This document shows, one piece after another, positions 1 through 64,000 of a stretch of DNA of 64,000 nucleotides. The notes beneath the pieces were generated by a model. It made no database searches, was not told the origin of the DNA, and saw only the letters and a list, made by a program, of their open reading frames with translations. The stretch is from positions 2,790,001 through 2,854,000 of the forward strand of contig OX337237.1 in assembly GCA_946965045.2 (NCBI GenBank), written 5' to 3'. Source of the DNA: Epithemia pelagica. Its lineage: Eukaryota > Protista > Bacillariophyta. The position numbers were made by a program, and so were the translations under genes. Position 1 is the first letter of the stretch. Every line of letters starts with the position of its first letter.

Positions 1-31
1 GGCCTCCAAGCTCTCGTCCAAGGACATCAAC

Positions 32-3025
32 ATGAGCAACAAAGCTGTGATGGAACTGAGGATTCAGTCACACAACCAGCTACTGCAAAAAGTTTCTATG
101 ATTGGAACCAAGATTCGTGGCAAATATTTGCATTTATGTGGTCAGTCAATTCCTTTTTCCTCTATCTGCCACGATATATGGCAGGGACCAAAGACCGACA
201 TTCTTGGAATTGTTCTTGTATTCACAGACCCCCGCAATTGCCACCATTACAAAATTCCGATCGGTCTTCTTCAGACAAAGGGTCATACGGCATCACAAGT
301 TGCCCGTCACACAGAGGGTTTGCTAAACACAGTTGGCTTTACCAAGGATGATTTGTTGGCATCGGTAAACGACAACACCAACTCTGCGGTTCTTGCAGGG
401 AAATACATCATAGGTCAAGATCGGGCAGGCAAATGTGAAATGCACAAGGCTGAATTGATTATTAAGCACGCCACTGGTCTTGCCCGGCGCAAGAAAGGCG
501 GCAAAGTGACCGATGAGTTTCCAGAGTTTGTGGACGTCTACAAGAAGTTTCATAAGTTTGCTTCTTGGTTGATGTCAAGCAAGGCCCGGTCTCGTTTTGA
601 TGATTTTCGAAAGTACGCCCAAAGCATCAACATGGTCGTCATTGAGATCCCTCTTCCCAATCTTACAAGGGTGGGAGGATGTGTCATCCTTTTCCAAGCC
701 CTTTTGCGACTCAGATTTGTATTCGAATTGTATGTCAGACATGCATCATGTCCTGAAGATTTCAAGAAGCTGTATCCCAACAGTAACTACTGGAATGCCA
801 TGGCTCAATTTGAGGCAATTCTCCTGCCGCTGAAAACTTGCGCTATGAGTTTGCAGTCTGATGAACCATCTTCCAACTCTGCTTCACTGGTTGAGATTTA
901 CATGTCCAAGACATTCATCAAAAAAATGAGAGACAATGGCGTCCCAGCTCTTCGAGTGACTTCGCATGCCAACCAACCTGTGACAAAGCAGTGAGATGCC
1001 AGTAAAACCATGACACAGCTTGAAAAGAATCGCAAATTGATTGCCTTTGATAAGTGTTTGGTCAGTTCCAAGACACTCATCAATCGTCTATTGAAAGAAT
1101 ATGATCATTATATGCGAGATGGTCCTGACGTCGAGGCAGAAAATGCTATGCTTGCAAACCCCCTTTTGTATACCATTGGAACAAGCTTATTCCAAAAACT
1201 TGGAGTGTATTTGGCAGTGGATATTGCAAGACTGGGGCAGCAGTATGTCACAGATATGGTTTCAAGATTTTCCAAGAAGAAACAGCAGAGCTTCGATGGA
1301 CCATCTGCTCCATCTGGTTCGACTGCTGCCTCTACTAACGACACTGGAGATGCAGATGCAGATGACGATGAAGACTCAGATGCTGGGGAGATTGGCGATC
1401 TACTGGGTTCCACAAGTCTATTTGGCCAGGTGGAACGAGACAGAGAAATAGTACAACGTGCCCTCATTCAGAACAGTCGTGGGAACACTACTGGTAATAC
1501 AGAGAATGTGGCCACACAGAACAATAATGAAGCGGAAATCCAGACACAGCAGAACTTTTTCCGGCGATGTGAAGAAGAACTGGCAGGCTACAAACGGTAC
1601 TGTGAGAGAGAGGTGCACCCGAATTGGGAGGCAGTAATCAAGAAATTCCCTACGGACAAATACAAGATGGAGTCTGAAAAGTGGACCGAGCGAGAAAAAA
1701 GGTTGTTTTCCTTTCGATGTGGGCAGAAAGATTTCCCGACAGTAGGCAAATACTTTGATTGTCTCCAGTGGTGGCAGCTGAACAAGGGAACATTCCACCG
1801 CATGTTTCCAACAGCCATGCTCTGGTTGAGTAAACCCTCCACCAATGCGTTTGCTGAGAGGGTGTTTTCCATGGCTTCCTGGTTCGCATCGAACCGACGA
1901 ATGAATCGACAGGGTAGCAAGGTTTTTGAGATGAGAACCCTGGATTGCATCAACAGGAAAGTTTTGGAAAGCATTTGGGTTGCCGAACAAGAGTTGGTTG
2001 AACAAGAGATTGTAGAAGGCAAGACTGTTTTGACTGTATCGGATGAGCACGGTCGTGAATCAGTCAACAACCAGGATGTACTACTTCTCTCTGAGCAGTC
2101 TTGTCAAGGAGATGTGCGTAGATACCATCAGATGATCAATGGTCTCCGAGACCACATGGACTACAATGACAAAGCGTCCGAATCTTTGGTGGTGGAAGAT
2201 GATGATGGTCCCCAAAAATTCTCCTATATTGGGGACGATGGCAAGACATACGAAGCAGACTCCATCGACATAGTCAACATTACCAGAGATGATGTCCCTG
2301 AAGCAAGCAAAGGTGAAGTCGAAGGTAATGGTGAAGGTGAAGGTGAAGGTGAAGTTCCCACTGAAAACCAGGCACCTGCTACCCAAGCATTGACATCAAC
2401 AGTGACCGATCAACATCAAATGAATGAATCTGATGACGAAAGTGATGGGGACTTAGGGGATGCCGATCTGTTAGAATATTTGAAAGAACGAAAGGACGAA
2501 GTCGAACACGAGGGAGACATGACGGTTGTTTCCTTGTCTACTGTCCAAACTAAGGGGCAGGACACTGCCCGGTCCAGTGCTGGAGGGAAAACCTCTTTGG
2601 ATTCGTCATCGAAGAAGAGGGCTGCCTCAAAGACACCGTCGGTGTCCTCTGACAAGGGAGGAACTGCCAAGAAACAGAAACGATCCGTAGCGGGTAAGAA
2701 GCCATCTCCTGAAGAACGATTGAGGGCCAAAAAGAAGGATGGAAATAAAGATGGAAAGAAACGAGCAACTGTGACGAGTCTTCCCTTACGCCGCAATACA
2801 AGGACTCCATCGCCTAATAGGCAAGGGTCAAAAGGAAAAAAGGCGGTAAGACGTTCTCCACGCAAAAAGAAAAGGAAGCAGCAGTCAAAATCCCGTGAAC
2901 AAAAGGCAATAGTGTATGAAGTCGAGGACACTGAAGAGGAAGACAATGAAGAAGAGGAGGAGGAGGAGGAGGGCTCATACAGTGATGATGACGACGAGGA
3001 TGGCAACGATGAGACGGAAGATTAG
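32..3025 (+). pseudogene. hAT-superfamily transposase, interrupted by one in-frame TGA (992-994); frame stays open to the left window edge
   Basis: ORFs 32-994 and 1010-3025 are in the same frame (Q*DASKTM). Motifs: CHDIW (first D), VNDNTN (second D), CEMH (CxxH), and the C-terminal dimerisation domain LQWWQ...FP.AM.WLSKPSTNAFAERVFS (catalytic E). Long acidic/basic low-complexity tail. Confidence 0.85.
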
Positions 3026-48596: not shown

Positions 48597-49189
48597 TGTC
48601 GTCGCTCTTGTTTCTTCTGTCGCTCCCTTACAAACCAACCTATTAGGTAGGTTCTCTTTCTCTTTGTTTCCTTGCTGTTGTCGTTGTTGTTACTCTTGGT
48701 TCAGGGATGCGTCACTGGTTGTGTGTGTTTCCCAGGAGACGAACAATACCTAGAGAGCAGGGGAGGAGAGAGAGTCGAGAACAGGGGCATCGAGAGGAAG
48801 ATCTCGAGAGAACAATTGAATAGTGCGCCATTGTGGCCAACATTTTTCGGCGTCCAGCAGCTGTTGGCAGATGGGTCGCGTTTCTGTCACGATGCTATGT
48901 TTGCTATGTGTGGGTGGATGGACCCTACTCCTATCTCTACCATGTACGGCGATTCGTCCTTGCCGAGAAAGGATGTCTCATGGAATCGGTGACATGACCA
49001 GGAAAAGTCATTCTTGTTACAATCTCCGATCTAGAGAGACAAAGTGCGCTGAAAGAGGAAAGGGGGTGTCTATACTACTAGAGGTCCTTGGACGTACACT
49101 AGTGCACAAGAGAGAAAAAGAGAGAGCTTGTGGTTTTGTTCCCTTTTCATTCGTCTCCAAGAAACGAGCCCGGAGAAGAACTACATTGA

Positions 49190-50092
49190 TTGACGTTCTC
49201 CAGCGGTAAGAATAGATGAAAGAATTGTTGGACCATCTCCCGATGATGGGATCCTGGCTTGATCCGGCTGGATAAAACGCCGATCGTCCCCTCCACGGTT
49301 GGCGTCAGCCCTGTTCTTGTTGTCGTCGTCGGATGGAGTTGTGGTGTATTTGGTCATCATGGCTGCCACTACTTCTTGGCCACGATTTTCCCATTCCTCC
49401 CGATTCTTTTGGGCATAACCCAAGTATTCGTCACTCGATACCCCAAAGACACCACAATCACTGAACTTTTTGGCCAATGGAATAATATAAAAGTAAAAAA
49501 AGCCCAGTTCACCCTGGTACCAAAACTCGGACGGATCCTTTTCCGCTCGTCCGTGTTGGTAGGCCGTGTACAGTTCCAGGAACAATCGTTCGTTCCATTT
49601 TCGAAAAATGTGCCAATGCTGCATGGTATGAGCCACATCGGAGGCCTGAATCAAGTGCTCAATCACAATGGTCGCCTTGCGATTGGTATTGTGGACCTGT
49701 GTGGTGGCATCCATATTACGAATCGTAGTATGGTTGTTGTCTTGGGAAAAGGCCTTGTCCCACCGTTGATTGCGCAATTGCTTGAGATCCTTGTCCATAA
49801 TATCCGTTGCCATGACTCCTGCGTGTGTGCGTAGTTGGAAACACCATGCATGAGACAAGACAAAAGTGTCAGAAGTGGTTTTGCATGGCTCAAGAAAGGG
49901 AAATATAGATCGATCTGGACAGCAACACCCCACAAGAACACGTACCATTGACCACCAGTTCGCGGAACCGAGCCATTTCCGCCTCCGTGCTGCAAATAAC
50001 ATTGCGGAGATCATCGAATTGGTCTTCCATCAAAAGATGCCACGACAAGTCGACCGAATTCTGTTCGGCCAAACTCTTGCCATTGTATTTGC
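49190..50092 (-). pseudogene. 3' stub (PDE C-terminal part) of a cyclase-PDE paralogue; intron 49819-49945
   Basis: KYNGKSLAEQNSVDLSW...RELVVNG|VMATD...IQASDVAHTMQHW is near-identical to 31653-32520, with the intron in the same position. Similarity ends near 50092. Confidence 0.9.
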
Positions 50093-50596
50093 TATTAGAA
50101 GCTTGGTGAAGGTAAATAATTCGTCACCGATTCGTCAACACCAAATGCGGAGACGTGACATGTGGGTATTTGGCCACGTCAGATGACGCGCGTCAATCGT
50201 GACGCCGTCACAGTAGCAACCTTGGGTACAGCCTCTCATCAATGAAGATAAATGGAACAATGCGCAGCGACATGACACACATGAACCGTCATCTCGCTGT
50301 TTGGAGTGCGCGAAAGGAATTTTCTTTGGCCTCCATGACGCACGTCTATTATTCTATCGACGACGAGGGCATGCCAAACTGCCGAACTTTCTATAGTTCG
50401 ATCGGGCATTCCCCTCATTCATTGTCGTCGTGACTTTGTATTCGGCTTTCGGCTGCCTTTTAAGAGAGGAATAGATTGAATTGTGTTGAAGGAGAGAACT
50501 AGAACGAATCTGCAAGACAGAATCAAGATCAAGGTATCTGGAGAGTGGAGGTACATTGGAACAACCGCAAAAGAACAACAGTGAACAACCACCACC

Positions 50597-53500
50597 ATGG
50601 AAGCAGTAGCTGCAGCCGCAACAACCTCATCGGACGACCACGTGGCAGTCTCAATGAGAACGAACGAACCAAGCCAAAACGAACCAAGCCTGGCGGAGGA
50701 TTCTAACACCACCAACAACGACGACAACTCGAACCGCAAGGACCAGGACTCCAATCTGGAACTAGACAAACAGGAGGGGATCCTTCCAGTTTCGCCACAT
50801 TCTCAGCCAGGAATGAGCACCCCGAATTCCTCTGTGAATTCCTTCCAGGCCAAAGCAGCATCTTTTCCAGTCGAGGTGGATGACAGGCAGAGGGACGATT
50901 CGAACCAACCAGAGGACGTGAAGAACGAGAACGAAGCACCATCCAGCATTCGTAGCCACCAGACCAACGAATCGTCGTCTGCGGCATCCACTCCGGATAC
51001 GAACAGCAGCAGCAGCAGTAGGAAAGTCTCCTCCATGCCAATCGCCAAGGAGGAATGTTTCCGAAAACAAGAGAATCTGGACGACAACAGTGAGGCATTG
51101 CATGGCAACAACTCACCCCGAAACAACCAGAACGAACCGACCAGTCATGTTCCTCTCCCGGTAGCCGCCATGAATGCCAATCCTCCTATGCCATCTTCCC
51201 CATCAGTAGACACCCTTGCGCTGACCGTGTTCGATGGGACACGAGAGGAAGATACCATTCTCACACCGACGACTGCTCCTCCTACTACGAATACTACAAC
51301 TCCTCCTCCTCTTTCACCACCAACACTTACGACTACCCTGGTCCTCGATTCGGACGGCATGACGAGTCAAAGTAGCGTGCATCGAAACAACAGCTACAAC
51401 AAGAACTACAAGAACAAAAAGCCCTTGACCGCACAAGGCTTTTTGCGAGCCTTGGAATTGGAAGATGAAATCCTCTTGTCCGACTATGTCTTGTTGCCTC
51501 AAGATGATCCTCGTCGTCATTCGACGGACTATAGCGGGGAAGATTGTTTCTTGTCGCATCGCGGACCGGATACCAAACGCGATTTGGTGGTACCCTTGGC
51601 CCGTACCTTGACCAATCTCTATGGCTATCGTTTGTTTGTCGATGCCCAAGCCGTGAATGAGCATGCGCGAGGATCCGGTCACTTGCCCAAACGCGATGTC
51701 TTACGGCATGCCTTGTGGAAATGTCAAAGCATGCTCATTTTGATTTCGCGAACCTTTGATCAGTCCTCCTGGTGTTTGCGAGAATTGTATACCGCCCTCT
51801 ATCGGCGTCGCGGTGATTCCGACTTTGAATTGTGCATCTTGTGGTGCGATGGCTTGACACCGGAATTGGGCAATCATTTGCCCGCCTATGCCGGATTGCA
51901 ATTGCATCGGTATCATCCAGCACCTCCCCACCAAGGAGGAGAAGAAGAGTCGAACGGTGCAACCGCCGTAGCCTCGTATCAGCCCTATACGACCTTGGAA
52001 GGCTTTGCCGTCGATTGTTTGCATCCAGTGGTTCGACACTTGATCTCTGGTCCTACGGCACCACTTGTATCCCAGGCCATTTTTACCGAAACCTGGCGAT
52101 GGTATTGTCCACTCAAACCACCCACGACACATCCAGGGCCACCGCCACCATCCGTACTAGCAACAAGATTGCAATCGAATGGGACACCATTATCCACAAC
52201 AACAACAGACGTAGTCCTGAGCAACGACCCCAACACTCCTCCATTCACTCGTACCAATAAGGATGCGGAAGTGGCCTCGAACGACAACGACGTTACTAGC
52301 CACAAGAACAACACGAATCAAGAACAACAACAGCCACGGGCAGAAGATGTCGAAGTGGGCAGTAGCAGCACCAGCCGGAGTAGTCCAAGTCATGATGACA
52401 ACCAAGACAAATCCAAGAAACCACCCAGCTTGCTATCCTCGTGGAACCGCAACCCGACCCTCCGGTACACCTTCTGGATTCTGATACTCTTGATTCTCCT
52501 TTGTGGAGTGGGTATTATCGTGGCGGTGGTGCTTCGAAATACCAAGGACGACGACGACAACAACAACAACACGAATGGACAAAGTGCTTCGTTGGATTCC
52601 CCCTCGTCTTCCACAACGAGTAACCCTTCTGTGCCTCCCACCTTGTCTCCATCGACACTCTCACCCACGACTGCCTTTCCCACACGAGTCCCTACCCCGA
52701 CACCCAGTGGTGCACCGAGTACATCCACGGCTCCTTCGATGGATCCACGAAAGGTGGTCTTGGTGGAATTTTTGCGGAATCAAACTCGGGTCGAAACTCC
52801 GTTGCAATATCCTGCCCAAGATCTCTCCACCTCTTCCATTGAAGAACTCGCCTTGACATGGCTGGTCGATGAAGATTCACTCGCGCTCGAAGTCAATGAT
52901 GCCTCGTCGCAACGACGTATTGTACAACGGTATGCGTTGGCAACACTCTGGTTTCTCCAAACACCCGAAACAACCTGGAGACAAGTGAATCAAATCAATT
53001 GGTTGTCGGCGGCACACGAATGCGAGTGGGCCATGGTTACCTGTCGAAACACGACAATTACGAATGATAATGGCGAAGAGGTTGGAATGGATCTTGTGGT
53101 GGATCAATTGGCTCTCGGCCGTCTCAAATTGACGGGTACCATTTCGGAAGATGTGGGACTCTTGACGGATGTTACATCTTTGGAGTTGACTGGCAATTCC
53201 TTGATTGGACCGTTTCCACCTCTTGTGTTGCAAATGACATCTCTCACCGTGCTACGACTGGATGGCAATGCCTTGACTGGTCCCATTCCCAATGAATTGG
53301 GCACCACGTTGACGCAATTGCAAGACTTGAGACTTTGGAACAATTTGTTGACGGGTACCCTGCCGAGTAGTATTGGCGAATTATCTCGTTTGACCTACTT
53401 GGATACAGGCAACAATCCGAGTTTGGGAGGTGTCTTGCCCACAACCTTGACGCAGTTGACAGCCCTGGAATCCATGCGATTGTGGATCAACAACTTTACG

Positions 53501-54091
53501 GGTCCTATTCCGGAAAATATCGGGGACCTCGAAGCATTGGAGTCACTCCTCCTGTCGAACAATGACTTGACGGGAACTCTGCCGAGTAGTTTTGGTCTAT
53601 TGAGTAATTTGGTCGTCTTTTATGCCGGATTCAATCCTCAATTGGGTGGTCCCCTTCCCAATGTTACGTTGTTGACATCGCTCACCCACCTGTGGTTGGA
53701 AGATACGGATTTTACTGGACCCATTCCCGAAGATGTGGGTGGCATGAGCAGTTTGCAATATTTAATCTTGACCAATAATCGCTTGTCGGGTACGATTCCC
53801 ACCAGTATTGGTCAACTTTCCAATCTCCTTCAATTTCGAGTGCTTCTAAATCCCGAATTGCGAGGTCCTATACCAAGTTCCATGGCCGATTTGACCAAAC
53901 TGAGTCTTTTTAACATTCACAATACCTCCTTGACAGGTGAGGTTCCCTTGTGCTCGGTGGTAGACTCACGATCCTATAGCATTGTGGCAGCCGATTGCGA
54001 CCAAGTCAATTGTACCTGTTGTACTCAGTGTTGTGACAGAGTAACGGGATCCGAGGACTCTCTCTTTAGAAGTGTCTGTGCTTTGCAATAA
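50597..54091 (+). CDS. TIR-TM-LRR receptor 1 (1164 aa)
   Basis: TIR EDCFLSHRGPDTKRD...SWCLRELYTALYR; TM at ~52472-52534; S/T/P stalk; QRYALATLWF and WLS..HECEW.VTC cap; ~12 plant-type LRRs; C-cap CDQVNCTCCTQC. Confidence 0.92.
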   Translation: MEAVAAAATTSSDDHVAVSMRTNEPSQNEPSLAEDSNTTNNDDNSNRKDQDSNLELDKQEGILPVSPHSQPGMSTPNSSVNSFQAKAASFPVEVDDRQRDDSNQPEDVKNENEAPSSIRSHQTNESSSAASTPDTNSSSSSRKVSSMPIAKEECFRKQENLDDNSEALHGNNSPRNNQNEPTSHVPLPVAAMNANPPMPSSPSVDTLALTVFDGTREEDTILTPTTAPPTTNTTTPPPLSPPTLTTTLVLDSDGMTSQSSVHRNNSYNKNYKNKKPLTAQGFLRALELEDEILLSDYVLLPQDDPRRHSTDYSGEDCFLSHRGPDTKRDLVVPLARTLTNLYGYRLFVDAQAVNEHARGSGHLPKRDVLRHALWKCQSMLILISRTFDQSSWCLRELYTALYRRRGDSDFELCILWCDGLTPELGNHLPAYAGLQLHRYHPAPPHQGGEEESNGATAVASYQPYTTLEGFAVDCLHPVVRHLISGPTAPLVSQAIFTETWRWYCPLKPPTTHPGPPPPSVLATRLQSNGTPLSTTTTDVVLSNDPNTPPFTRTNKDAEVASNDNDVTSHKNNTNQEQQQPRAEDVEVGSSSTSRSSPSHDDNQDKSKKPPSLLSSWNRNPTLRYTFWILILLILLCGVGIIVAVVLRNTKDDDDNNNNTNGQSASLDSPSSSTTSNPSVPPTLSPSTLSPTTAFPTRVPTPTPSGAPSTSTAPSMDPRKVVLVEFLRNQTRVETPLQYPAQDLSTSSIEELALTWLVDEDSLALEVNDASSQRRIVQRYALATLWFLQTPETTWRQVNQINWLSAAHECEWAMVTCRNTTITNDNGEEVGMDLVVDQLALGRLKLTGTISEDVGLLTDVTSLELTGNSLIGPFPPLVLQMTSLTVLRLDGNALTGPIPNELGTTLTQLQDLRLWNNLLTGTLPSSIGELSRLTYLDTGNNPSLGGVLPTTLTQLTALESMRLWINNFTGPIPENIGDLEALESLLLSNNDLTGTLPSSFGLLSNLVVFYAGFNPQLGGPLPNVTLLTSLTHLWLEDTDFTGPIPEDVGGMSSLQYLILTNNRLSGTIPTSIGQLSNLLQFRVLLNPELRGPIPSSMADLTKLSLFNIHNTSLTGEVPLCSVVDSRSYSIVAADCDQVNCTCCTQCCDRVTGSEDSLFRSVCALQ

Positions 54092-54984
54092 GTAGAAGAG
54101 CCAAAACATCCAGAAGAGGTCGACCGAGGTGAAACGTTATGGAAGCAACGGATATAATAACGAGAGACCACACGGGTTTAATTCAGCACAAGCAGGAACA
54201 TAATCCACATGGCGTAAAGGATCAGGAATTTGAGCCACGAAGCATATCTCATGTTGGCTGTGTATCATGTCTTGTTGCCTTTCATCAAATCAAGGCTGTC
54301 AAATCGGCAAATCCGAAACGCAATGGAAAAGCCACGAGCCTCCAGCCCACAGATCGACGTGAAATGCATCCAAAATATTGGTATCAGGTGTATTGCATAT
54401 TGCATCACGCAGTAGGGAAACGATAGACTCTACCCAAGAAACCATGTCGTCTAAGTTTTGCACTCTTTCGATGGGTTGCTGTCATATGTTATTAAAGACA
54501 AGACGCACGGAAGGGAGATGCACTTTCTGGTGATCTTCTCTTGGACTCATTTTACGTGAACGCGACTGACGGATTGCGCGGGTGTTTGGTTCTTCTCACA
54601 GGCGCATGGAGGACCTCGCTTCACAGTGGCTGTACACGCACAGTTTGTATGCTCTCCGAAGCTTGTTAGCACACCGCCAAGTTTGCTTCGATCTTGCTGT
54701 TCCTTTTCCTTTTGTGGTTGCTTAGACCACAACTTTATGCTCTGTTGTGGCTCAGGCCTGCAGTGTCAAGGTTTACGCTCGCTTTCGGCTGACAGAACAA
54801 AAGCACGTAGCACAGGTAGAGAACCCGGAGGTTTGCGTGAATGCATTGCTCGCGATCTTCTTTGGGAACGCGACTTGGAAATTGTAGGATATGATGATCC
54901 ATGTTCACATGTTTCTGTCTTCTCATTTCCCTTTTGAGACAATTCACTACGACACTCGATTGTTCTATCCTGACGTTCTACATC

Positions 54985-57597
54985 ATGGAGAACGAGGCAC
55001 AAGTACGATCTCAGAATACTAGCAATGACTGGTATCACGACAAGGATGACCACGACAACGGGATTAACCGTATGCAGTCATCGTCGGATTCTTTGACCGG
55101 TGAAAACTTCTTGCGAGCCATGGAATCGGAAGATACAACGCTTCTGTCTCGCTTTATTTTCCCCAAAGAACAAGAAGATGTTGATGACGAGTATCCAGGC
55201 GAAGATTGCTTTCTGTCGCACCGCGGACCCGATACGAAACGTGACTTGGTGATTCCATTGGCCCGTTCCCTCAAAGAATTGTACGGTTATCGCTTCTTTC
55301 TAGACGCCGAGCCAGTCAATGAACACTCTCGAGCGTCCGGTCATCGCAACAAAACGGACGTGCTTCGACAGGCTTTGTGGAAATGCCGCGTCTTGTGGAA
55401 ATGCCGCGTCTTTGTGGTGTTCTTGTCTCGTGAGTTTCACAAATCCAAATGGTGTCTGAAGGAATTGTATACAGCCCTTTACCGGCATCGAGGCAAAGAC
55501 AACCATGACTTTTTGGTGCGCATGGTCTTTTGTGAAGGTATGGATCCTGACATTTGCGATGTCATGCCTGCCTATGCCGGTTTGAAATTGGGACAAACGT
55601 TTGGCACGTTGTACAAACCCTATACGACATTGGAAGGCTTTGTGGTTCATTGTTTGCATCCCACGATACGACAACTTTTGTCAGGAAACAATGCCTCTAT
55701 GGTACCCGACAGTGTATTCACCGAAAAATGGAGGATACATTGTCCCCTCAAACCTCCCAAGTACCTCGAAACAGTGCCCTCAAATTTGGACGAGGAATCG
55801 TATCCCTCAAGGCCAAGTAACATGGAGCACCGCTTTTTTGATGAGGCCACTCAAGAGGGTCCATATGATTCAGACATGAATATTCCCTGGCATTCGACCC
55901 GGAACGAGATCCATGCGAAGTTTAATGCAGAGAGCAGTGAGAAAGACGAACCCAATGGATCTAATGTCGTTTCAGTATGCTCCTGGGCAAGCACACGGAC
56001 TGTCTCGGTCTTAGTTGCGTCTTTTGCCCTTATCCCTTTCGGTGCGATTGTGATTGGTATACTGGTCCCCTTCAACCGTTCCGTCGATGATGACACCCAA
56101 ACCTCGTTGCGTCCAGCAACAAGCATAACTCCCACTCAATCACCATCCCATGTCAGTTCTTTGCCTTCCTCGTTGCCCTCGTCATTTCCCAGCTCCACTC
56201 CGACCGAAACTCCATCTCCGACCGAAGACCCTCGCACAATGGATATTTTAACGTTGATCCAGAGCCACACGCTAGTGCAACCTTTGGCACTTCGTTATCC
56301 TCTCAATCTTGATGAACACTCCTCGGCAACACCAGAAGAAAAAGCATTGACATGGTTAATTGATGAAGATCTGGCGAAATTGGGAGTCCAAACTCCGTCG
56401 GGGCAGCTTCGAACCTTGCAACGGTACGCTCTGGCGACTCTTTGGTTCCTGCAAACACCAGAGAGGCCTTGGAAAGAAAAAGACCAAGTTAACTGGTTAA
56501 GCGAAGCTAATGAGTGTGATTGGGCCATGGTCACCTGTCGAGAAAAGATGACAATGACAAATGCCCAAGGAAGTAGCAACGATACTGAACGAGTCGTAGA
56601 CCGACTGGGAGTGACAGCCCAGAAGCTACAAGGCCCGCCTCCCCAGGATTTGGGCCTGTTGTCGAACTTGAGTTGGTTGGATTTGAAAGGGAATGAACTC
56701 TCGGGATCCTTTCCCAGTTTTATTTTACGGTTGACTGGTTTGGCCTTTTTGGACTTGGCTGGTAATCAATTCACGGGACCAATTCCGGACGAGATTGGAA
56801 CCTTGACTCAGTTACAAGAACTTCGGCTGTGGAGCAATTCTTTTACAGGAACTGTTCCCCCTACCATTGGTGAGCTTTCTAATCTGTTTTATATCAACGT
56901 TGGCACCAATCCTAGCTTGGGAGGCCATTTACCAAGTTCGGTGACGAAATGCACTATGCTTAAAGAAATGGTCTTGTGGTTCAGCAATTTCACTGGACCC
57001 ATTCCAGACGACATTGGCAACTTGGTCGAATTGGGAAACCTACTTCTTTCGGGAAATTCGCTATCGGGCACGATTCCTGACAGTTTCGATCAACTGGTGA
57101 ATCTCGTAGTCTTCATGGCCGAAGGTAATGGCAATTTGGGAGGTCCCCTGCCTAGTAATCTCCCTGAGTTGTCACGGCTAAGCCACGTGTGGTTAGAGGG
57201 CAATCGTTTTACAGGAACAATCCCCAACGGCATTGGACGGTTAACCAACTTGAAGTTTTGGATGTTGCAAAACAATTTGTTGAAGGGTACAATTCCGAGC
57301 AGTGTTGGTCAACTTTCCCAACTATTCGAATGGGACGTTGGTAACAATCCTGGACTGTGGGGCCCCATTCCTACGTCCTTGTCGGACTTGGAAGACTGGC
57401 GTATCTTTAATATCCACTCGACATCCTTGACGGGAAAGGTGCCTCTATGCGGTGTTTATGGGCAACGTCAATACACAACAGTGGCGGCGGATTGTAACAA
57501 AGTCCAGTGTCCTTGTTGCACCCACTGCTGTGACGGTGTGCCAGGCACAAAGTCTCATGGAATCATGTTTGTGGCAAAGTTGAGGACTGAAGAATAA
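54985..57597 (+). CDS. TIR-TM-LRR receptor 2
   Basis: Same architecture. TIR at ~55201, KWCLKEL, TM at ~56002-56073, ~12 LRRs, C-cap CNKVQCPCCTHC. ATG 54985 preferred over the track start 54901. Confidence 0.92.
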   Translation: MENEAQVRSQNTSNDWYHDKDDHDNGINRMQSSSDSLTGENFLRAMESEDTTLLSRFIFPKEQEDVDDEYPGEDCFLSHRGPDTKRDLVIPLARSLKELYGYRFFLDAEPVNEHSRASGHRNKTDVLRQALWKCRVLWKCRVFVVFLSREFHKSKWCLKELYTALYRHRGKDNHDFLVRMVFCEGMDPDICDVMPAYAGLKLGQTFGTLYKPYTTLEGFVVHCLHPTIRQLLSGNNASMVPDSVFTEKWRIHCPLKPPKYLETVPSNLDEESYPSRPSNMEHRFFDEATQEGPYDSDMNIPWHSTRNEIHAKFNAESSEKDEPNGSNVVSVCSWASTRTVSVLVASFALIPFGAIVIGILVPFNRSVDDDTQTSLRPATSITPTQSPSHVSSLPSSLPSSFPSSTPTETPSPTEDPRTMDILTLIQSHTLVQPLALRYPLNLDEHSSATPEEKALTWLIDEDLAKLGVQTPSGQLRTLQRYALATLWFLQTPERPWKEKDQVNWLSEANECDWAMVTCREKMTMTNAQGSSNDTERVVDRLGVTAQKLQGPPPQDLGLLSNLSWLDLKGNELSGSFPSFILRLTGLAFLDLAGNQFTGPIPDEIGTLTQLQELRLWSNSFTGTVPPTIGELSNLFYINVGTNPSLGGHLPSSVTKCTMLKEMVLWFSNFTGPIPDDIGNLVELGNLLLSGNSLSGTIPDSFDQLVNLVVFMAEGNGNLGGPLPSNLPELSRLSHVWLEGNRFTGTIPNGIGRLTNLKFWMLQNNLLKGTIPSSVGQLSQLFEWDVGNNPGLWGPIPTSLSDLEDWRIFNIHSTSLTGKVPLCGVYGQRQYTTVAADCNKVQCPCCTHCCDGVPGTKSHGIMFVAKLRTEE

Positions 57598-58123
57598 TGG
57601 ACTGTCTTTGTCTGATGAGGTCTGTTGAAAAATGGAGTGAACCAAATGACAAATCGTGAGGGACATACGGACACCCACCGAGAGAACCAGGATAATGCTA
57701 TCATAAGAGTCGACGACATGAATCTAAGGCGAGAAGAAAACTCAAGGAGTACGGAATGACATGAGATTCATTCCTTTTAGGACTGATACTCTTCTAGCTT
57801 AGAGGTGGTTTTCCTGCTACTCCTGTGCGACGAAAGTCATTGGTTGTGTAGATGGAGTGCCGCTCGTGCAGAGACAGCCTGCCTACCTAATTTACATGGA
57901 TAGTCCGAGGATACTTTCTACCAATCAAAAGTATCCATTAGAAACACGTCACTGATCTTTGCATTGGTTCTGGAGATGGAGTGCCGCTCGGAATTGACGT
58001 GACAGAGAGCTTGCGACTTGCGACTCGCAACATACCCGTAGACTCATGTGCAGAGGATTTGTCAACGACAGCAACGACAGGCAAAAGATCTACAATCTAC
58101 CTCAGTAGAGCCGTCATCCACGC

Positions 58124-61100
58124 ATGGATAGAACGATGGATGAACCTTTCAGAGATGGTGAGGGAGTGGAGGAAGGGGAAACTCCTTCTTCGTGGAACGC
58201 GGAAATGAGGGCCAAGGTGGAAGAGGAGGAGAAGAGCGATACAACGGAACATGAAACAGATCACAGAGACATGCAAGAAACTGGTAGTCGTCGAAACTCT
58301 AGTACGAAGAAGAACGATAAGGCGAGGCACGCTTCCTGCCAACCAAAAGGGGAGGAAGACAAATTCGATGAGATTTGGGCTAACAGCAACTCGAACAGCG
58401 ACCTTTTGGAGGAACCGCTTGAATTTCCTTCCACGGTGGTAGTGGATCATCATCAGGCCAGCAAGTACTCAACAAGCCTGACAGGCGAAAATTTTCTACG
58501 TGCCCTGGAAGCGGAAAATCAAGACCTGTTGTCACATTTTATTTATTTCCAACAACAAGCCTCGACGGCTGACCCTAAACAATTTCAGTACGATTGTTTC
58601 ATGTCCCATTTGGACCAAGATACGCAACGAGATTTGGTAGCACCTCTGGCAGAAACCATGCAAGAGATTTATGGATTTCATAGTTTTGTGGACTCGGACA
58701 ACAATCCAAAAGGTGATGTGAAGAGTCCAAACGAAAACAAGGACAGCTCACGGACCATCACTGCCTTGTGGACATGTCGTGTTGTCTTGGTGTTTTTGTC
58801 GCGTGAATTTCACAAATCCAATCGTTGCTTGAAGGAGTTGTATACAGCCTTGTATCGACGCCGCGATCCCTCCCAAGACTTTATCATGCGTATCGTATTT
58901 TGCGATGGCATGGATCCAGGTTTGTGTGACAGTTTGCCAGCGTATGCTGGATTGGATGTGGGTGACACCTTTGGTACCCTGTATCGACCCTACATGACCT
59001 TGGAACAATTTTGTGTCGAATGTATGCATCCCACTATGCGACAATTATTGTCGGGCAATGACGCAACCATTGTCCCCGATGGCATCTTTTTACAACACTG
59101 GAGACGGAATTGTCCTCTCAAACCGCCTCGGTATCTAGTGGAGTCGTCTGCTGCTACCAATCCCACCAAGACGAGTACTCCAACGTCTGCTTTATCTATG
59201 GATATTGCCCATGAGGAGAGTCTTTCCGTTCGCAATCCAAAAGACGTCCTTGTGTCGTCCCTGAAATACAGCTCCAAGCCTCAACAGTCGAAACAGCTCA
59301 AGGAACCGATGAAGGATTCGTCTCGAGGCATGACGAGATCCTCTATCACTCTGAGTCGTGATGACCTGGAGGTTGCTAGCACACCACTACAGCATGACCC
59401 GACACTTTCGAAGAAGGACATTCCAAAACCACAAGCCACAACAGGATTCTTCACTAGGAGAAAAGTAGTTGTATTCGGTTCTGTGATTGGTCTGGTGATT
59501 CTGGTGGTAGCGATTGTCGCTGCAGTGGTGACCACCCGATCCCCCGACACGACCACGTCGTCCGCTTTCAAAGAAGAGCAAGTTGCTCCTTCTCCTTTGC
59601 CCACAACGGCTCCAGTCGCATCCAGGAGTGCTCCCACCCCCGTTTCACCCTCATCACCACCTACGACGCCACCTCCAACGCCGCTACCGACGAGTCCTCC
59701 ATCCCAATTCATGGCTCCTACCACCAGCCCTCGAATCGTCCAGGTGGTCTCCTTTTTACAGAGTGTAACACTTACCACCTCAACCTTGCGCTATCCAGTC
59801 TTTGGACCATCCGCCACACTGGAAGAAAAGGCCTTGGCGTGGATTTTGGACACGGATCCTGCCCAATTAGGAGTAGAAACCGATGCGGAGCAACGACGAC
59901 TGGTACAACGATATGCCCTGGCAACCTTGTGGTTTTTGCAAAACACCACGGAGGCGCTGTGGGAACCAGACGCTCAACAAGGTTGGTTGACGGCGGCACA
60001 CGAATGCGACTGGGCCATGATCACCTGTGAAGACGTGCGGTATTTGGAGGGCATTGGCAATACCATTATTACCGAACGGTTTGTTGACGCGCTGGTAGCT
60101 GTAGGAAAGAATATTCAAGGGCAGCCCTCCAATGATTTGGGACTCTTGACTCGTTTGACAGAATTACTTTTGAGTGAAAATGCTTTGACCGGTCCCTTCC
60201 CTGTGGGCCTGACGCACTTGACGGCACTTAAAGTCTTGGAGTTGGATCAGAATGAGATACAAGGGCCCATTCCCAGCCAGATTGGAGAATTGACGGACCT
60301 GGTTGAATTGAGAGCCTGGAGCAATCTCTTGTCAGGACGAGTTCCCTATAGTTTTCGGCGTTTGTCCAAGCTAACGACATTGGATTTGGATGACAACGAA
60401 ATTTCAGGTACCTTTCCTTCGGCGCTCACGAGTTTGACCAATCTACGATTTTTGGAATTGGACAACAATGCCTTTTCGGGAACCATCCCTGATAGCTTTA
60501 TTTCGCCCTTGTCTAATCTCCGCTTGCTCGAGTTGGATGGCAATCAGTTTTCGGGGCCGCTCCCAACAACACTATCGGGATTGATACAGCTGAATACTTT
60601 GTATTTGCACGACAACCGATTCACCGGTTCTATACCAGAGGATATTGGCCGTTTGACCAATATGATACGTCTTGCCTTTCAGCAAAACCGATTCACTACC
60701 TTTCTTCCGAGCAGCGTTGGTGACATGGTCAAATTGACTTACTTGAGCTGTCATTCCTGCAGACTATCAGGGTCTATTCCCGGTACATTATCAAACTTGA
60801 CCGATCTGAACACACTCGACCTTTCGTTGAATGATTTGACAGGGACCGTGTTTAGTGGCTTGAGCGAATTGTCCAATCTAGAGGTGTTCAGCATTAGTCG
60901 CAATCCAGATTTGGGTGGAACCATTCCCAGCGAAATCGCCGACTTTCCTCAACTAACACGGTTGTATGCCTATGCGACCAATATATCGGGTGATATTCCA
61001 CTTTGTTTGAACACAAACAGAACCTATGAATATATTGTGGCCGATTGTGAAGAAGTTTCTTGTCCCTGTTGCACCCATTGTTGCCCCGCATTTGGTGATA

Positions 61101-61132
61101 TTCCCTCCTTTGGAAATTCAAACTGCCTGTGA
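58124..61132 (+). CDS. TIR-TM-LRR receptor 3 (1002 aa)
   Basis: TIR YDCFMSHLDQDTQRD...NRCLKEL; TM at ~59465-59533; ~13 LRRs; C-cap CEEVSCPCCTHCC. Confidence 0.92.
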   Translation: MDRTMDEPFRDGEGVEEGETPSSWNAEMRAKVEEEEKSDTTEHETDHRDMQETGSRRNSSTKKNDKARHASCQPKGEEDKFDEIWANSNSNSDLLEEPLEFPSTVVVDHHQASKYSTSLTGENFLRALEAENQDLLSHFIYFQQQASTADPKQFQYDCFMSHLDQDTQRDLVAPLAETMQEIYGFHSFVDSDNNPKGDVKSPNENKDSSRTITALWTCRVVLVFLSREFHKSNRCLKELYTALYRRRDPSQDFIMRIVFCDGMDPGLCDSLPAYAGLDVGDTFGTLYRPYMTLEQFCVECMHPTMRQLLSGNDATIVPDGIFLQHWRRNCPLKPPRYLVESSAATNPTKTSTPTSALSMDIAHEESLSVRNPKDVLVSSLKYSSKPQQSKQLKEPMKDSSRGMTRSSITLSRDDLEVASTPLQHDPTLSKKDIPKPQATTGFFTRRKVVVFGSVIGLVILVVAIVAAVVTTRSPDTTTSSAFKEEQVAPSPLPTTAPVASRSAPTPVSPSSPPTTPPPTPLPTSPPSQFMAPTTSPRIVQVVSFLQSVTLTTSTLRYPVFGPSATLEEKALAWILDTDPAQLGVETDAEQRRLVQRYALATLWFLQNTTEALWEPDAQQGWLTAAHECDWAMITCEDVRYLEGIGNTIITERFVDALVAVGKNIQGQPSNDLGLLTRLTELLLSENALTGPFPVGLTHLTALKVLELDQNEIQGPIPSQIGELTDLVELRAWSNLLSGRVPYSFRRLSKLTTLDLDDNEISGTFPSALTSLTNLRFLELDNNAFSGTIPDSFISPLSNLRLLELDGNQFSGPLPTTLSGLIQLNTLYLHDNRFTGSIPEDIGRLTNMIRLAFQQNRFTTFLPSSVGDMVKLTYLSCHSCRLSGSIPGTLSNLTDLNTLDLSLNDLTGTVFSGLSELSNLEVFSISRNPDLGGTIPSEIADFPQLTRLYAYATNISGDIPLCLNTNRTYEYIVADCEEVSCPCCTHCCPAFGDIPSFGNSNCL

Positions 61133-62189
61133 TTGGGTAATAGCTGCCCTTCTTTGGAAATTCTAGGCAGCTACCCATCCTTGTCGGACCCCCGACTTAT
61201 AGGCTGGGTTTCCACGAAGAATGACGAGATACGAGATGCATCTGTGTATTTGGACAACGCCAAAAAAAACAAGTCTCACAACAATTTCGAGAATTGACAC
61301 CCCACGATACGGCCCATGATTTGTTTGGACCACCACCAACAACAATAACACCAACGGCGTCCCACCGCCACAACATCAACAACAAGAGCAGTATGAGTAA
61401 ACGAATGGCAATAATCAGTCGTTTTGGTTGCACAGCCACTCCCTATGCACAAGCTTTAAAGAGCAGGGGTGGAACGTGCGGATCAATCGGGTGTTCAAGA
61501 TTTTTGTTTCGCCATGTCGACACAAGCCACCTTGGTTGATGTTCGACAGTCCACCTTTGCTCAAATGGCAGGTTTGCTGGGCAATGCCTCCACGGTCCGA
61601 TGGTATTCCGTGGACGAACGCAAAAAGCAAGAAACACAGTCCCCCCCCCCCAAAGACACTCCACCATCCGCGTCTTTCCAAAACAAGGACAACACTGCAG
61701 TCGTTGCTGCTTCTAGGAACCATGAGACCAGCAACACGTCCTCGTCCTCGTTTGGATCGCTCCAACAGCCTACCTTGCTTCCAGTGGACCCTGTTTTGAA
61801 GGTAGAACGAAAATTTTTGCAACAGCATGTTTGTCCTTCGGGATCCATGACGATCGAATCCTTGCAACAAACATCCAAGGCCTTGTTCGCATCCCACTCG
61901 GATGTGAGTCTTGAAACGAAACCTGACTCCTATCCTGTTGTTGAATGAGGGGTTGCAAGAGCTGTGGAACTAGATTCCAGCGTGTTGGTATACCAAGACT
62001 CACAGAACACACCAATTCTAAAGACTGGGAAGGATCCGATGATCGACTGGATCAATCAACAATCTTCCGATCCATGGTAAACTTTTCCGTTACTCTCATT
62101 CATGAAAATCCATCAATAGAGCCGCAGAAACACATCAACATGCACTCCAGCTCAACAACCATCAAACGAACCAACCACGAAACAAAGAA

Positions 62190-62662
62190 TGTGAGCATTC
62201 CACGTGGAATTGGTGAGCTGACGGACCCTACCTCGCTTGACTTTCCAAATCAATGGTCTTGTGGAGCCAATATTTGAGGCAATATCGAACTTTACAAAAT
62301 TGAATTTCGTGAGTTTCCGTTCCAACGTTAGGGCAACCAGTGGCAACGACTTTTCAGGTCTCATTCCTGATCACTTGCTCTCGGCCTTGAGGTTTCTGGA
62401 TTTTTCAAAAAATCAAAGGCTGGAGGGTATCATTTCAACCTTGGTTGGGAACCTTCCCGTTTTCACTGTCTTCTACGCCTGTCGCACCATCCGGACAGGC
62501 GCCATACGTCTGTCTCTGTGTGGGTCGGCAGAGGGGAGGTCTAGTTTGGTCGTTGTGGATTGCGAAAAAGTGGCGTGCCCGTGTTGCTTGTATTGCTGTC
62601 TAGCGTTTGGGGATTGTCCTGGCTTTGACTTTATCAAACTGGAGTACATTACTTACTTCTGA
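62190..62662 (+). pseudogene. Decayed LRR/C-cap remnant of the same receptor family
   Basis: IPRGIGELTD, then in another frame ISNFTKL...NDFSGLIP...LRFLDFSKNQRLEG...VVVDCEKVACPCCLYCC. Confidence 0.75.
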
Positions 62663-63142
62663 ACCTTTTGTGAGCGGCAGAAGGAAACCAAAAGGGTCAG
62701 AGGTAACAACTACCACAGGTCCCAATGGTCGAGCCATGACACACAAAAGAACCTACTGGGCAAGAGAACCACACACACCACATCATACAACAGCCGTATA
62801 GTTCTCAAAACATGCAAACTGCTCTGGACTAGAAAATCTTGGAAGCATATAGTCCTCAATCTCTTGATCTGTCTTGATATGTATTGAAAATTTGCTCTGC
62901 TTTTCAATTCCCATCTTTTGTGTTGCGCGGAAAAAGCGTCACCGCGCGTACGCGTACCGCCAAGGGTGCCGTATACGCGCCCGCAGGCCCAGCACACAAA
63001 ACGCAATGCGCCAGTCGCTGTTGAATCACCGATATTATGGAAGTTGCGGTTTGCAGTCCTCTTCATCATCAATCTTCATCCCTGTCTACACGTCGATGAT
63101 GCGACGTTATTGTCAATAGCGTCGTCGATTCCGCATACCGCT

Positions 63143-64000
63143 ATGGAAAACACTCCAGATGACGAGGAACCGTCCCTTGCCCTTGAGGAGCAAATCCCCG
63201 AACATGCGGATTGTGAGTCTTTGACGGCGGCCAACTTTCTTCGTGCCATGGATTCCAACGACCCAGATGTATTGTCGAACTTTGTGTTTCTTTCCAAACA
63301 TGATCCACGGCCGGATTATAAAGGCGAAGATTGTTTCATGTCGCACAGAGGACCCGACACCAAGCGAGATTATGTTGTTCCACTGGCAAAGACATTACGA
63401 GAACTCTACGAGTTCAAGATTTTTGTAGACTGCGAACCAGTCAATGAACTTTCACGGAACGCACTGGATCTTGATAAGGGCGAGGTGATTCGGCACTCGT
63501 TATGGAAATGCCGTGTGGTTCTCGTCTTTTTGTCTCGTGATTTTCATAACTCGAAATGGTGTTTGTTGGAATTGTACACCGCATTGTATCGTCAACGAAT
63601 GGATCTTGAGAACAAAGACTTTGTTCTTCGAATCATATTTTGTGATGATATGGATCCTGACAAGTGCAACGAGATGCCTGCTTACGCTGGGTTGGATCTG
63701 GGTGGAAAACTTTGGGGTTCTTTCGGAGCCGTATACCTATCTGGAAGACTTTGCCGTGGGTTTGCATCCCATTGTACGAGAGATAATTTCGACGGATGAA
63801 GCTTCTCCTCGTTCTCCGGCATCTGAAAAAGAGTTTTTTACGAAATGGCGCCGTCACTGTCCACTCAAAGCTCAGTCCAATAATCTGAAGAATGTGAATC
63901 CCCTCCACCGGAAGCTCCTAATTCTTGGTTTTATGTTACTACTTGGCGGAATTGTGGTGGCGGCTGTGATGTTACCGGACGATCCGACTCCGTTGCCGCC
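63143..64000 (+). pseudogene. TIR-TM receptor copy 4 (5' part), with one extra A at 63706-63709 causing a frameshift; runs off the window
   Basis: EDCFMSHRGPDTKRD...KWCLLELYTALYR. After the shift: NFGVLSEPYTYLEDF...KWRRHCPLK...HRK-LLILGFMLLLGGIVVAAVML. Confidence 0.85.

What the first reader, a model, noticed from the sequence alone, without database searches (positions are those of the whole stretch)
51539..63571. All four TIR domains keep the NADase catalytic glutamate
Seen: the motif xCLxELY puts Glu at 51782, 55462, 58835 and 63569, and the first strand reads DCF(L/M)SH with RGPDTK in three copies. Known: the equivalent Glu is catalytic in SARM1, plant TNL TIRs and bacterial Thoeris ThsB, which cleave NAD+ or make cADPR-type signals when clustered. 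Inference: ligand-driven clustering through the LRR could switch on a membrane-anchored NADase, giving a one-protein receptor-enzyme rather than an adaptor scaffold like TLR TIRs.
Basis: partly seen in the sequence, partly recalled or inferred. Interest (0 to 1): 0.78.

Follow-up and report, generated by a model that had tools for sequence, protein, structure and literature searches.

The report
Diatom reversed Toll-like receptor cluster
A diatom-type genome carries a tandem cluster of membrane receptor genes with an N-terminal, plant-like TIR domain inside the cell and leucine-rich repeats outside; all four TIRs do keep the glutamate that NAD-cleaving TIRs use, but that residue alone does not prove enzyme activity, and only one of the four copies looks fully intact and canonical.

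Summary
Glu codons sit at 51782, 55462, 58835 and 63569 in xCLxELY motifs. DCF(L/M)SH starts the first strand, and RGPDTK is present in three copies. All four domains pass Pfam TIR. A confident model is a complete TIR fold closest to plant NLR TIRs. Sequence and profile alignments put the Glu on L6/L7 E135 and RUN1 E100.

The inference is only partly supported. This Glu occurs in over 70% of all TIRs, including non-enzymatic TLR1/2/6/10. Stronger support comes from the plant-type HRG..TK loop, the ligand-contacting Trp, their joint loss in three family members, and purifying selection.

The four copies are not equivalent:
- A is intact.
- B has a 6-residue in-frame duplication, and its allele on the other haplotype is frameshifted.
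- C has lost the Trp and the RG.
- D is frameshifted inside the TIR on this haplotype and intact on the other.

The architecture is TIR, one membrane helix, then a plant-type LRR ectodomain. I found no published description. Diatom relatives carry the same TIR module on NB-ARC-TPR proteins.

No RNA or activity data were obtained. First readers of this scan had already noted this stretch and other Glu-bearing TIR genes in this genome.

The parts
50597..54091 (+). Gene A: 1164-aa uninterrupted ORF. Order: low-complexity N-terminal tail, TIR module, TM helix, Ser/Thr/Pro stalk, LRR ectodomain, Cys-rich C-terminal cap.
   Evidence: The other-haplotype allele is an open frame (L011:5451-8759).
51422..52126 (+). 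Gene A TIR module (aa 276-510). It holds DCFLSHRGPDTK at 51542 and the Glu codon at 51782-51784 in WCLRELY.
   Evidence: Pfam TIR E 9.8e-9. AF2 pLDDT 82, pTM 0.83. VIA-align Z 11.9-12.7 to plant TIRs and AbTir. dN/dS 0.27 between haplotypes.
52478..52534 (+). Gene A transmembrane helix (aa 628-646).
   Evidence: Kyte-Doolittle mean 3.45 over 19 residues. The N-side flank is net positive and the C-side flank net acidic.
54901..57597 (+). Gene B: 898-aa ORF with the same architecture. The likely start is the Met at 54985. The Glu codon is at 55462-55464 in WCLKELY. TM helix at 56011-56067.
55378..55413 (+). 18-nt tandem duplication in the gene B TIR (WKCRVL/WKCRVF) at the helix B to strand C junction. 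It is in frame here. The other haplotype has a 19-nt version that shifts the frame.
   Evidence: Both forms appear as contig ends in public reads (table 7, place 388). [quoted passage not shown]
58124..61132 (+). Gene C: 1002-aa ORF with the same architecture. The Glu codon is at 58835-58837 in RCLKELY, so the Trp is replaced by Arg. The AA loop reads LDQDTQ instead of RGPDTK. TM helix at 59465-59521.
   Evidence: The TIR module has dN/dS 0.10 between haplotypes, so it is constrained despite the substitutions.
61945..62662 (+). Remnant of a further paralogue: two overlapping frames encoding LRRs and the Cys-rich C-terminal cap. There is no TIR and no TM helix.
   Evidence: ORFs 61945-62277 and 62237-62662. 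tblastn with the D allele gives 38% identity over LRRs.
63143..64000 (+). Gene D, 5' part; the gene runs off the window to about 66126 in window numbering. It holds DCFMSHRGPDTK at 63329 and the Glu codon at 63569-63571 in WCLLELY. An extra A at 63706 shifts the frame inside the TIR, giving a stop at 63799.
   Evidence: Reads show both alleles at about equal depth in three runs (table 4, place 5307 of L014). The other haplotype encodes an uninterrupted 999-aa protein (P0086, L011:17854-20853). A second frame change lies just beyond the window, at 64017-64023 in window numbering, in a poly-C run and is unresolved.

Best explanation
The stretch is part of a tandem, fast-turning-over cluster of single-pass receptor-like genes in a diatom-type genome. 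Each protein has a cytosolic N-terminal TIR module, one membrane helix, a Ser/Thr/Pro stalk and an extracellular plant-type LRR domain with a Cys-rich cap. This is the reverse domain order of a Toll-like receptor.

Shown: the domains, the fold, the homology of the Glu to the catalytic Glu of plant TIRs, purifying selection on the TIR, and the broken alleles.

Inferred: a ligand bound by the LRRs brings the cytosolic TIRs together. The canonical copies then bind and cleave NAD+ at a pocket formed by the HRG..TK loop, the Trp and the Glu, and either make a nucleotide signal or deplete NAD+. The canonical copies are A, the intact D allele, and the two TIRs of the neighbouring gene E. B is uncertain because of its duplication. 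C keeps the Glu but has lost the Trp and RG, and more likely acts as a non-catalytic or altered partner.
For: - Domain: Pfam TIR is above cut-off in all four copies, with LRR families C-terminal.
- Fold: the AF2 model of the A module has pLDDT 82 and pTM 0.83. Foldseek's top hits are all TIRs, with plant RUN1, L6, L7, ROQ1 and RPS4 first.
- Fold coverage: VIA-align gives Z 12.7 to RPPT-TIR and AbTir-3AD, 12.6 to RPP1 and 11.9 to RUN1-NADP+, covering the whole TIR.
- Glu homology: phmmer aligns the Glu on L6 and RUN1 WCLxEL. hhalign against plant TNL TIRs gives 97.7% probability, E 1.5e-12, and matches both FLSHRGPDTK to FLSFRGPDT+ and WCLkEL to WCLeEL.
- Literature on the Glu: L7 Glu135 is the NADase catalytic residue, next to Cys132 (10.1101/2021.11.09.467869).
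- Literature on the pocket: the plant FRG AA loop lines the RUN1 NAD pocket, and W71 and E75 bind ligand in SARM1 (PMC7075850).
- Coupled loss: across 15 genes of this TIR subfamily, the 12 with a G..TK-type AA loop all keep Trp and Glu. The 3 with a degenerate loop each lost Trp or Glu. My rough Fisher p is about 0.002, ignoring phylogeny.
- Selection: dN/dS between haplotypes is 0.27 (A TIR) and 0.10 (C TIR), against 0.94 for the A N-terminal tail.
- Shared module: the same TIR module heads NB-ARC-TPR STAND proteins in other diatoms, including Entomoneis paludosa. In plant TNLs that position is occupied by an oligomerisation-activated TIR enzyme.
- Topology: there is one strong TM segment, no signal peptide in A or C, and a positive N-side flank. 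The C-terminal part has Cys-rich caps and is homologous to plant extracellular LRRs, E 1e-95.
Against: - The Glu is present in over 70% of all TIRs and in over 90% of the non-enzymatic TLR1/2/6/10 group, so it does not discriminate (PMC7075850).
- The fold matches scaffold TIRs (MyD88, MAL, IL-18Rbeta) nearly as well, at Z 10-11.5.
- The BB-loop region is longer than in plant TIRs and lacks their RGD/E motif, and helix A has no plant SH motif (alignment). The self-association surfaces and composite active site of plant TIRs therefore cannot be assumed.
- His replaces the Phe of the plant FRG motif.
- No run on record as RNA was found, so expression is unshown.
- Only A is both intact and canonical on this haplotype.
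Confidence: 0.5

Rival explanations
1. Scaffold TIR. The TIRs are not enzymes. After receptor clustering they recruit other TIR proteins by TIR-TIR assembly, as animal TLRs do. The Glu is kept for structural or interaction reasons.
For: The same Glu is kept in over 90% of the non-enzymatic TLR1/2/6/10 group, and the survey's authors conclude it has a role beyond catalysis (PMC7075850). The genome holds at least 10 further TIR loci outside this cluster that could serve as partners. The model matches MyD88, MAL and IL-18Rbeta TIRs at Z 10-11.5. C is under strong purifying selection (dN/dS 0.10) although it lacks Trp and RG, so a non-catalytic function is selectable in this family.
Against: The AA-loop and helix C motifs are plant-NLR-like rather than TLR-like, and no RDxxPG box 2 is present. 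The AA loop, Trp and Glu are lost together in three genes, which is easier to explain by a shared ligand pocket. The best sequence and fold matches are enzymatic TIRs.
Confidence: 0.3
2. A different TIR chemistry. The pocket acts on nucleic acids or NAD-capped RNA (2',3'-cNMP synthetase/nuclease, or NAD-RNA decapping) rather than on free NAD+.
For: The Cys of WCLxEL is kept in A, B, C, D and both TIRs of E. [quoted passage not shown] TIR NAD-RNA decapping is reported in PMC10937652 (listed; only its abstract was read).
Against: Nothing specific points to nucleic-acid binding. The basic helix D residues used by L7 were not examined. A membrane-tethered TIR has limited reach to nucleic acids. 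SNC1 immunity needs the NADase but not the synthetase activity (PMC9706416 abstract).
Confidence: 0.1
3. A decaying cluster. The genes are relics without present function, and the Glu is simply not yet mutated.
For: D is frameshifted on this haplotype and B on the other. There is an LRR-only remnant at 61945-62662. Gene E is split by an insertion of about 8 kb. The TIR-only copy on contig 9 has lost Trp, Cys and Glu. No RNA evidence was obtained.
Against: A and C are long uninterrupted ORFs on both haplotypes. Their TIR and ectodomain parts have dN/dS of 0.10-0.40 at dS of about 0.03-0.10, while the A tail evolves neutrally at 0.94. Every broken gene has an intact allele.
Confidence: 0.05

Closest known systems
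Plant TNL TIR domains (L6/L7, RUN1, RPP1, ROQ1, RPS4; Pfam PF01582, 'group 2' of Toshchakov and Neuwald 2020)
   Same: They are the best sequence and fold matches. The TIR is N-terminal. The strand A/AA-loop motif FLSxRGxDT(R/K) is shared and is identical to the SHRGPDTK of a moss TNL. So are the SxWCLxEL helix with the catalytic Glu and neighbouring Cys, and the F(Y/C)D..DP strand D motif.
   Different: There is no NB-ARC: a membrane helix and an extracellular LRR follow the TIR instead. The BB loop is longer and lacks RGD/E. There is no SH motif in helix A. His replaces Phe before RG. The module has a family-specific N-terminal helix pair and a C-terminal W..CP helix. EDS1-type downstream partners were not looked for.
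Animal Toll-like receptors
   Same: Both are single-pass membrane proteins that combine an extracellular LRR with a cytosolic TIR.
   Different: The domain order and predicted topology are reversed: the TIR is N-terminal, there is no signal peptide, and the protein is type II. The LRRs are of the plant-specific type. The TIR is not TLR-like in box 2. [quoted passage not shown]
Haptophyte (Gephyrocapsa huxleyi) ectodomain-TM-TIR proteins induced on virus infection (PMC12489294)
   Same: This is a microalgal membrane protein with an intracellular TIR that keeps the Glu and matches plant RPS4 in structure. The authors propose it as a receptor that makes signalling molecules.
   Different: That protein has its TIR C-terminal and a non-LRR ectodomain. 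The authors state that their TIR genes encode no LRR or NBS domains. Sequence relatedness to the present family was not tested.
Diatom TIR-NB-ARC-TPR proteins (P0018, P0019, P0091 from Entomoneis paludosa, P0092, P0094)
   Same: They carry the same extended TIR module, 37-49% identical and matching over the whole 219-position profile, with the same AA-loop and WCLKELY motifs.
   Different: They are cytosolic STAND architectures with no TM helix or LRR. None of this type was found in the window's own genome, where the module occurs only with TM-LRR or as a truncated copy.
Bacterial Thoeris ThsB and AbTir
   Same: The TIR fold is shared (AbTir Z 12.7 with 134 of 134 residues aligned). PADLOC ThsB matches are weak for A, B and the intact D allele, E 5e-6 to 4e-4.
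   Different: Only generic TIR similarity is seen. There is no operon partner and no ThsA-type effector context, and C gives no ThsB match.

Membership tests
TIR domain (Pfam PF01582) | Profile HMM score above the curated gathering cut-off (21.3 bits) | tested here: met
   A 35.7, B 33.9, C 30.7 and D 37.5 bits. The HMM covers only about positions 3-98 of 179.
TIR domain (Pfam PF01582) | Complete TIR alpha/beta fold | tested here: met
   In the AF2 model of A (pLDDT 82), residues 36-214 align to whole TIR chains: RUN1 23..191 at Z 11.9, and AbTir 134 of 134 residues at Z 12.7. DSSP assigns four strands; a fifth was not called.
NAD+-cleaving TIRs (plant TNL TIR, SARM1, AbTir, ThsB) | Catalytic Glu in the helix after strand C (E75 column; L7 E135, RUN1 E100) | tested here: met
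   Present in all four copies and aligned to the plant Glu by phmmer and hhalign. It is necessary but not sufficient.
NAD+-cleaving TIRs (plant TNL TIR, SARM1, AbTir, ThsB) | Ligand-contacting Trp four residues before the Glu (W71) | tested here: inconclusive
   Present in A, B and D; replaced by Arg in C on both haplotypes.
NAD+-cleaving TIRs (plant TNL TIR, SARM1, AbTir, ThsB) | AA-loop (F)RG motif lining the NAD pocket of plant group 2 TIRs | tested here: inconclusive
   HRG is present in A, B and D, with His replacing Phe. C reads HLD.
NAD+-cleaving TIRs (plant TNL TIR, SARM1, AbTir, ThsB) | BB loop and self-association interfaces that build the composite active site | tested here: not met
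   At the sequence level the BB-loop region is about 6 residues longer than in plant TIRs and lacks RGD/E, and there is no SH motif in helix A. Other interfaces may exist. The homodimer prediction gave no verdict.
NAD+-cleaving TIRs (plant TNL TIR, SARM1, AbTir, ThsB) | Measured Glu-dependent NAD+ turnover | not testable with these tools
   Needs a biochemical assay.
Toll-like receptors | Signal peptide, N-terminal extracellular LRR, TM helix, C-terminal TIR with box 2 RDxxPG | tested here: not met
   The order is TIR-TM-LRR. There is no N-terminal hydrophobic signal in A or C, and no box 2 motif.
Plant TNL (TIR-NB-ARC-LRR) | NB-ARC NTPase between the TIR and the LRR | tested here: not met
   No NB-ARC hit in any of the four proteins at E up to 1. 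A TM helix occupies that position.
Plant-type LRR receptor-like proteins or kinases | Extracellular plant-specific LRRs with capped ends, plus (for RLKs) a cytosolic kinase | tested here: inconclusive
   The LRR part hits plant LRR-RLK ectodomains at E 2e-95 to 1e-54, 29-34% identity. No kinase domain is present. The orientation is opposite to plant RLKs and RLPs.

The most novel reading that the evidence does not exclude
Diatoms possess a lineage-specific 'reversed Toll-like receptor'. It would be a type II surface receptor whose extracellular plant-type LRRs directly switch on a cytosolic, plant-NLR-like TIR NADase, with no adaptor and no NTPase. The same TIR module also arms NB-ARC-TPR sensors in other diatoms. 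That would amount to a TIR-nucleotide immune signalling network in a major group of marine phytoplankton. Catalytically degenerate paralogues such as C would act as regulators.
Probability: 0.3. Interest if true: 0.8.

Novelty: new variant of a known kind. Interest (0 to 1): 0.55.

Why it matters
Diatoms carry out a large share of ocean primary production (general knowledge, not tested here). Their defence and cell-surface sensing are poorly understood. Seven full-text searches found no description of TIR proteins in model diatoms, and an older survey reported diatom LRR receptors as lacking any effector domain.

A surface LRR receptor fused directly to a plant-like TIR would link two ideas that are usually kept apart: pattern recognition at the membrane, and TIR nucleotide signalling inside the cell. 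It would also give a simple system for testing whether proximity alone activates a TIR enzyme.

The cluster also shows birth-and-death dynamics typical of immune loci. It has divergent haplotypes (dS about 0.03-0.10), allele-specific frameshifts, a remnant copy, and a neighbouring paralogue split by an insertion.

Tried and rejected
- **Homodimer prediction** of the A TIR module: score 0.00, reported as 'no answer'. It is not evidence either way.
- **Expression**: the single run search returned four coded runs of one study, all kept as contigs of unknown kind and none on record as RNA. Expression could not be assessed. One run (X3) has very uneven depth, but contigs cannot show RNA level.
- **Position of the Glu in 3D:** I used sequence and profile alignment and secondary-structure position instead.
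- **Word-index homologue search** restricted to the TIR region: only six proteins, so I ran the exhaustive profile search.
- **'Sister assembly' as another strain or species:** rejected. Both alleles sit at about equal depth in the same runs, and both contigs occur in ENA records of the same clusters. I treat it as the second haplotype.
- **D frame change as an intron:** rejected. The two frames overlap, and the difference is a single extra A relative to the other allele.
- **PADLOC scan**: only weak generic ThsB-type TIR matches.
- **Species identification:** not pursued beyond 'diatom-type'. That label rests on the Entomoneis paludosa relative and a Thalassiosira exigua LRR protein.
- **Two paper searches failed on term syntax**.

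Full report
**1. What is in the sequence**

The region holds four same-strand paralogous genes.
- A is ORF 50597-54091 (1164 aa).
- B is ORF 54901-57597 (898 aa, with a likely start at the Met at 54985).
- C is ORF 58124-61132 (1002 aa).
- D starts at 63143 and runs off the window.

The Glu codons are at 51782, 55462, 58835 and 63569, inside WCLRELY, WCLKELY, RCLKELY and WCLLELY. DCF[LM]SH starts at 51542, 55204, 58592 and 63329. RGPDTK follows in A, B and D, and LDQDTQ in C. A six-frame scan of all 64 kb for the relaxed motif finds only these four sites.

Pfam scores TIR (PF01582) above its cut-off in all four, and several LRR families in the C-terminal halves of A, B and C.

**2. Architecture and topology**

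Each complete protein has exactly one strongly hydrophobic 19-residue segment, with Kyte-Doolittle means of 2.6 to 3.45. A and C have no hydrophobic N-terminus. The flank on the TIR side is net positive, and the other flank is acidic or neutral.

After the helix comes a Ser/Thr/Pro-rich stalk. Next is an LRR N-cap ending in a C.W..V.C motif, then the LRRs, and finally a Cys-rich tail (CxxxxCxCCxxCC).

The LRR part hits plant LRR receptor kinase ectodomains at E 2e-95 to 1e-54. The most economical reading is a type II protein with a cytosolic TIR and an extracellular LRR. This is inferred, not shown.

**3. Is it a TIR, and is the Glu the catalytic one?**

- *Sequence against solved structures.* phmmer finds flax L6 best (E 0.0024), then L7, RUN1 and ROQ1. 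In those alignments the diatom Glu lies on the Glu of WCLMEL and WCLDEL. [quoted passage not shown] By my count from the construct numbering, the RUN1 residue is E100. The PDB entry title 'E100A mutant ... bound to NAD' agrees.
- *Profile comparison.* Nine family members against plant TNL TIRs give 97.7% probability and E 1.5e-12. Both the strand A/AA-loop motif and the WCLxEL helix align. One moss TNL in that set has the identical SHRGPDTK.
- *Model.* An AlphaFold2 model of the A module is confident (pLDDT 82, pTM 0.83). The Glu is residue 121, in helix 116-131, just after strand 103-108.
- *Fold search.* Foldseek's top hits are all TIRs, with plant ones first. VIA-align gives Z 12.7 to RPPT-TIR and to AbTir with 3AD, 12.6 to RPP1, and 11.9 to RUN1 with NADP+. 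The alignments span whole TIR chains.

The domain is therefore a complete TIR and the Glu is homologous to the catalytic Glu.

**4. How much does the Glu tell us?**

Little on its own. [quoted passage not shown] That includes over 90% of the TLR1/2/6/10 group, which has no reported activity. The authors conclude that the residue has a role beyond catalysis (PMC7075850). The four copies are also paralogues, 46-57% identical. The model matches MyD88, MAL and IL-18Rbeta TIRs at Z 10 to 11.5, not far below the enzymes.

Other features carry more weight.
- *AA loop.* The same survey says that the plant-specific FRG AA loop forms part of the RUN1 NAD pocket. It also says that W71 and E75 bind ligand in SARM1. 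A, B and D keep HRG and the Trp.
- *Coupled loss.* I tabulated 15 genes of this TIR subfamily: the window genes, the neighbouring gene E, the copy on contig 9, and relatives from the profile search. The 12 with a G..TK-type AA loop all keep Trp and Glu. The three with a degenerate loop each lost Trp or Glu. C has Trp to Arg. The contig 9 copy reads QSLMQLY. An Entomoneis paludosa protein reads WCLKQLY. A rough Fisher test gives about 0.002, ignoring phylogeny. Coupled loss suggests the three elements serve one pocket.
- *Selection.* Between the two haplotypes, dN/dS is 0.27 for the A TIR and 0.10 for the C TIR. It is 0.94 for the low-complexity A tail.

Against a plant-like mechanism, the BB-loop region is longer and lacks RGD/E, and the helix A SH motif is absent.

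**5. The four copies are not equivalent**

A collinear contig in ENA is 92-97% identical. It is the second haplotype, because public contigs from three runs carry both alleles at about equal depth.

- D on the window haplotype has an extra A at 63706. That is 137 nt after its Glu and still inside the TIR, and it gives a stop at 63799. The other allele encodes an uninterrupted 999-aa protein. A second frame change in a poly-C run just beyond the window is unresolved.
- B on the window haplotype has an in-frame 18-nt tandem duplication (55378-55413, WKCRVL/WKCRVF) at the helix B to strand C junction. The other haplotype has a 19-nt version that shifts the frame. Both forms appear in the read contigs (table 7).
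- C is intact on both haplotypes but lacks the Trp and RG.
- A is intact and canonical on both.

An LRR-plus-Cys-cap remnant lies at 61945-62662.

Beyond the window, on the minus strand, gene E encodes TIR-TIR-TM-LRR. Its second TIR is split by an insertion of about 8 kb. A TIR-only copy on contig 9 has lost Trp, Cys and Glu.

**6. Relatives and literature**

An exhaustive profile search of 1.84 billion representatives found only 15 proteins at E below 1e-30 that match the whole module. Their architectures are TIR-TM-LRR, TIR-NB-ARC-TPR, TIR-ankyrin and TIR with other repeats.
- TIR-TM-LRR: the window genes and one further protein, P0090, on a 3.7-kb contig.
- TIR-NB-ARC-TPR: five proteins.

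One relative is named, from the diatom Entomoneis paludosa. The window's genome has at least 16 Pfam TIR matches and 3 NB-ARC matches.

Full-text searches found no description of TIR proteins in model diatoms. [quoted passage not shown] A 2025 paper describes haptophyte ectodomain-TM-TIR proteins with the conserved Glu, but without LRRs and in the usual order.

**7. Verdict**

My best reading, at about 50%, is a proximity-activated NAD-cleaving TIR in the canonical copies, with C as a degenerate partner. A scaffold role stands at about 30%. Other TIR chemistries (about 10%) and a functionless decaying cluster (about 5%) remain possible.

The reversed TIR-TM-LRR architecture with a plant-like TIR is a new variant of a known kind.

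The homodimer prediction gave no verdict. No RNA evidence was obtained.

Noticed in passing
window 61945-62662 (+): An LRR and Cys-rich-cap remnant of a further paralogue sits between genes C and D. It is in two overlapping frames and has no TIR or TM helix.
   Followed up: partly
L002/L004/L015 (G000:C10 about 2883000-2892600, minus strand; 29-39 kb beyond the window end): Gene E encodes TIR-TIR-TM-LRR. The second TIR is interrupted after ...TELYG by an insertion of about 8 kb and resumes at LYGYKFFVD. Both TIRs keep WCLKELY.
   Followed up: partly
L007 (G000:C9:644930-645523, minus strand): A TIR-only copy of the same module (294-aa open frame). Its motif has degenerated to QSLMQLY and its AA loop to GDKGNRE. 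It has an allele, P0089, on the other haplotype.
   Followed up: partly
window 45242-62914 against L011: The two haplotypes differ by about 3-4% in DNA over this locus (dS about 0.03-0.10 in the genes). A roughly 210-nt stretch (about 50960-51171) in the low-complexity N-terminal tail of gene A does not align to the other haplotype.
   Followed up: partly
window 1010-3022 (+): A 671-aa ORF has a hAT-family dimerisation domain (Pfam E 3e-6), so it is probably a transposase-derived or transposon gene. Several other long ORFs between 10.8 and 35.5 kb have no Pfam match at all.
   Followed up: no
window 38935-42432 (+), 45696-48638 (-), 49181-50014 (-): The neighbouring genes are a DEAD/ResIII helicase-like ORF (1166 aa), a zf-MYND protein (981 aa) and a phosphodiesterase-like ORF directly upstream of gene A.
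   Followed up: no
L014 2400-3060 (window about 60800-61460): In run X3 the contig depth over the 3' end of gene C and the following intergenic stretch is 3-5 times that of the flanks (about 1100-1950 against about 390). This could be a repeat, or a transcript if X3 is RNA. The kind of run is not on record.
   Followed up: no
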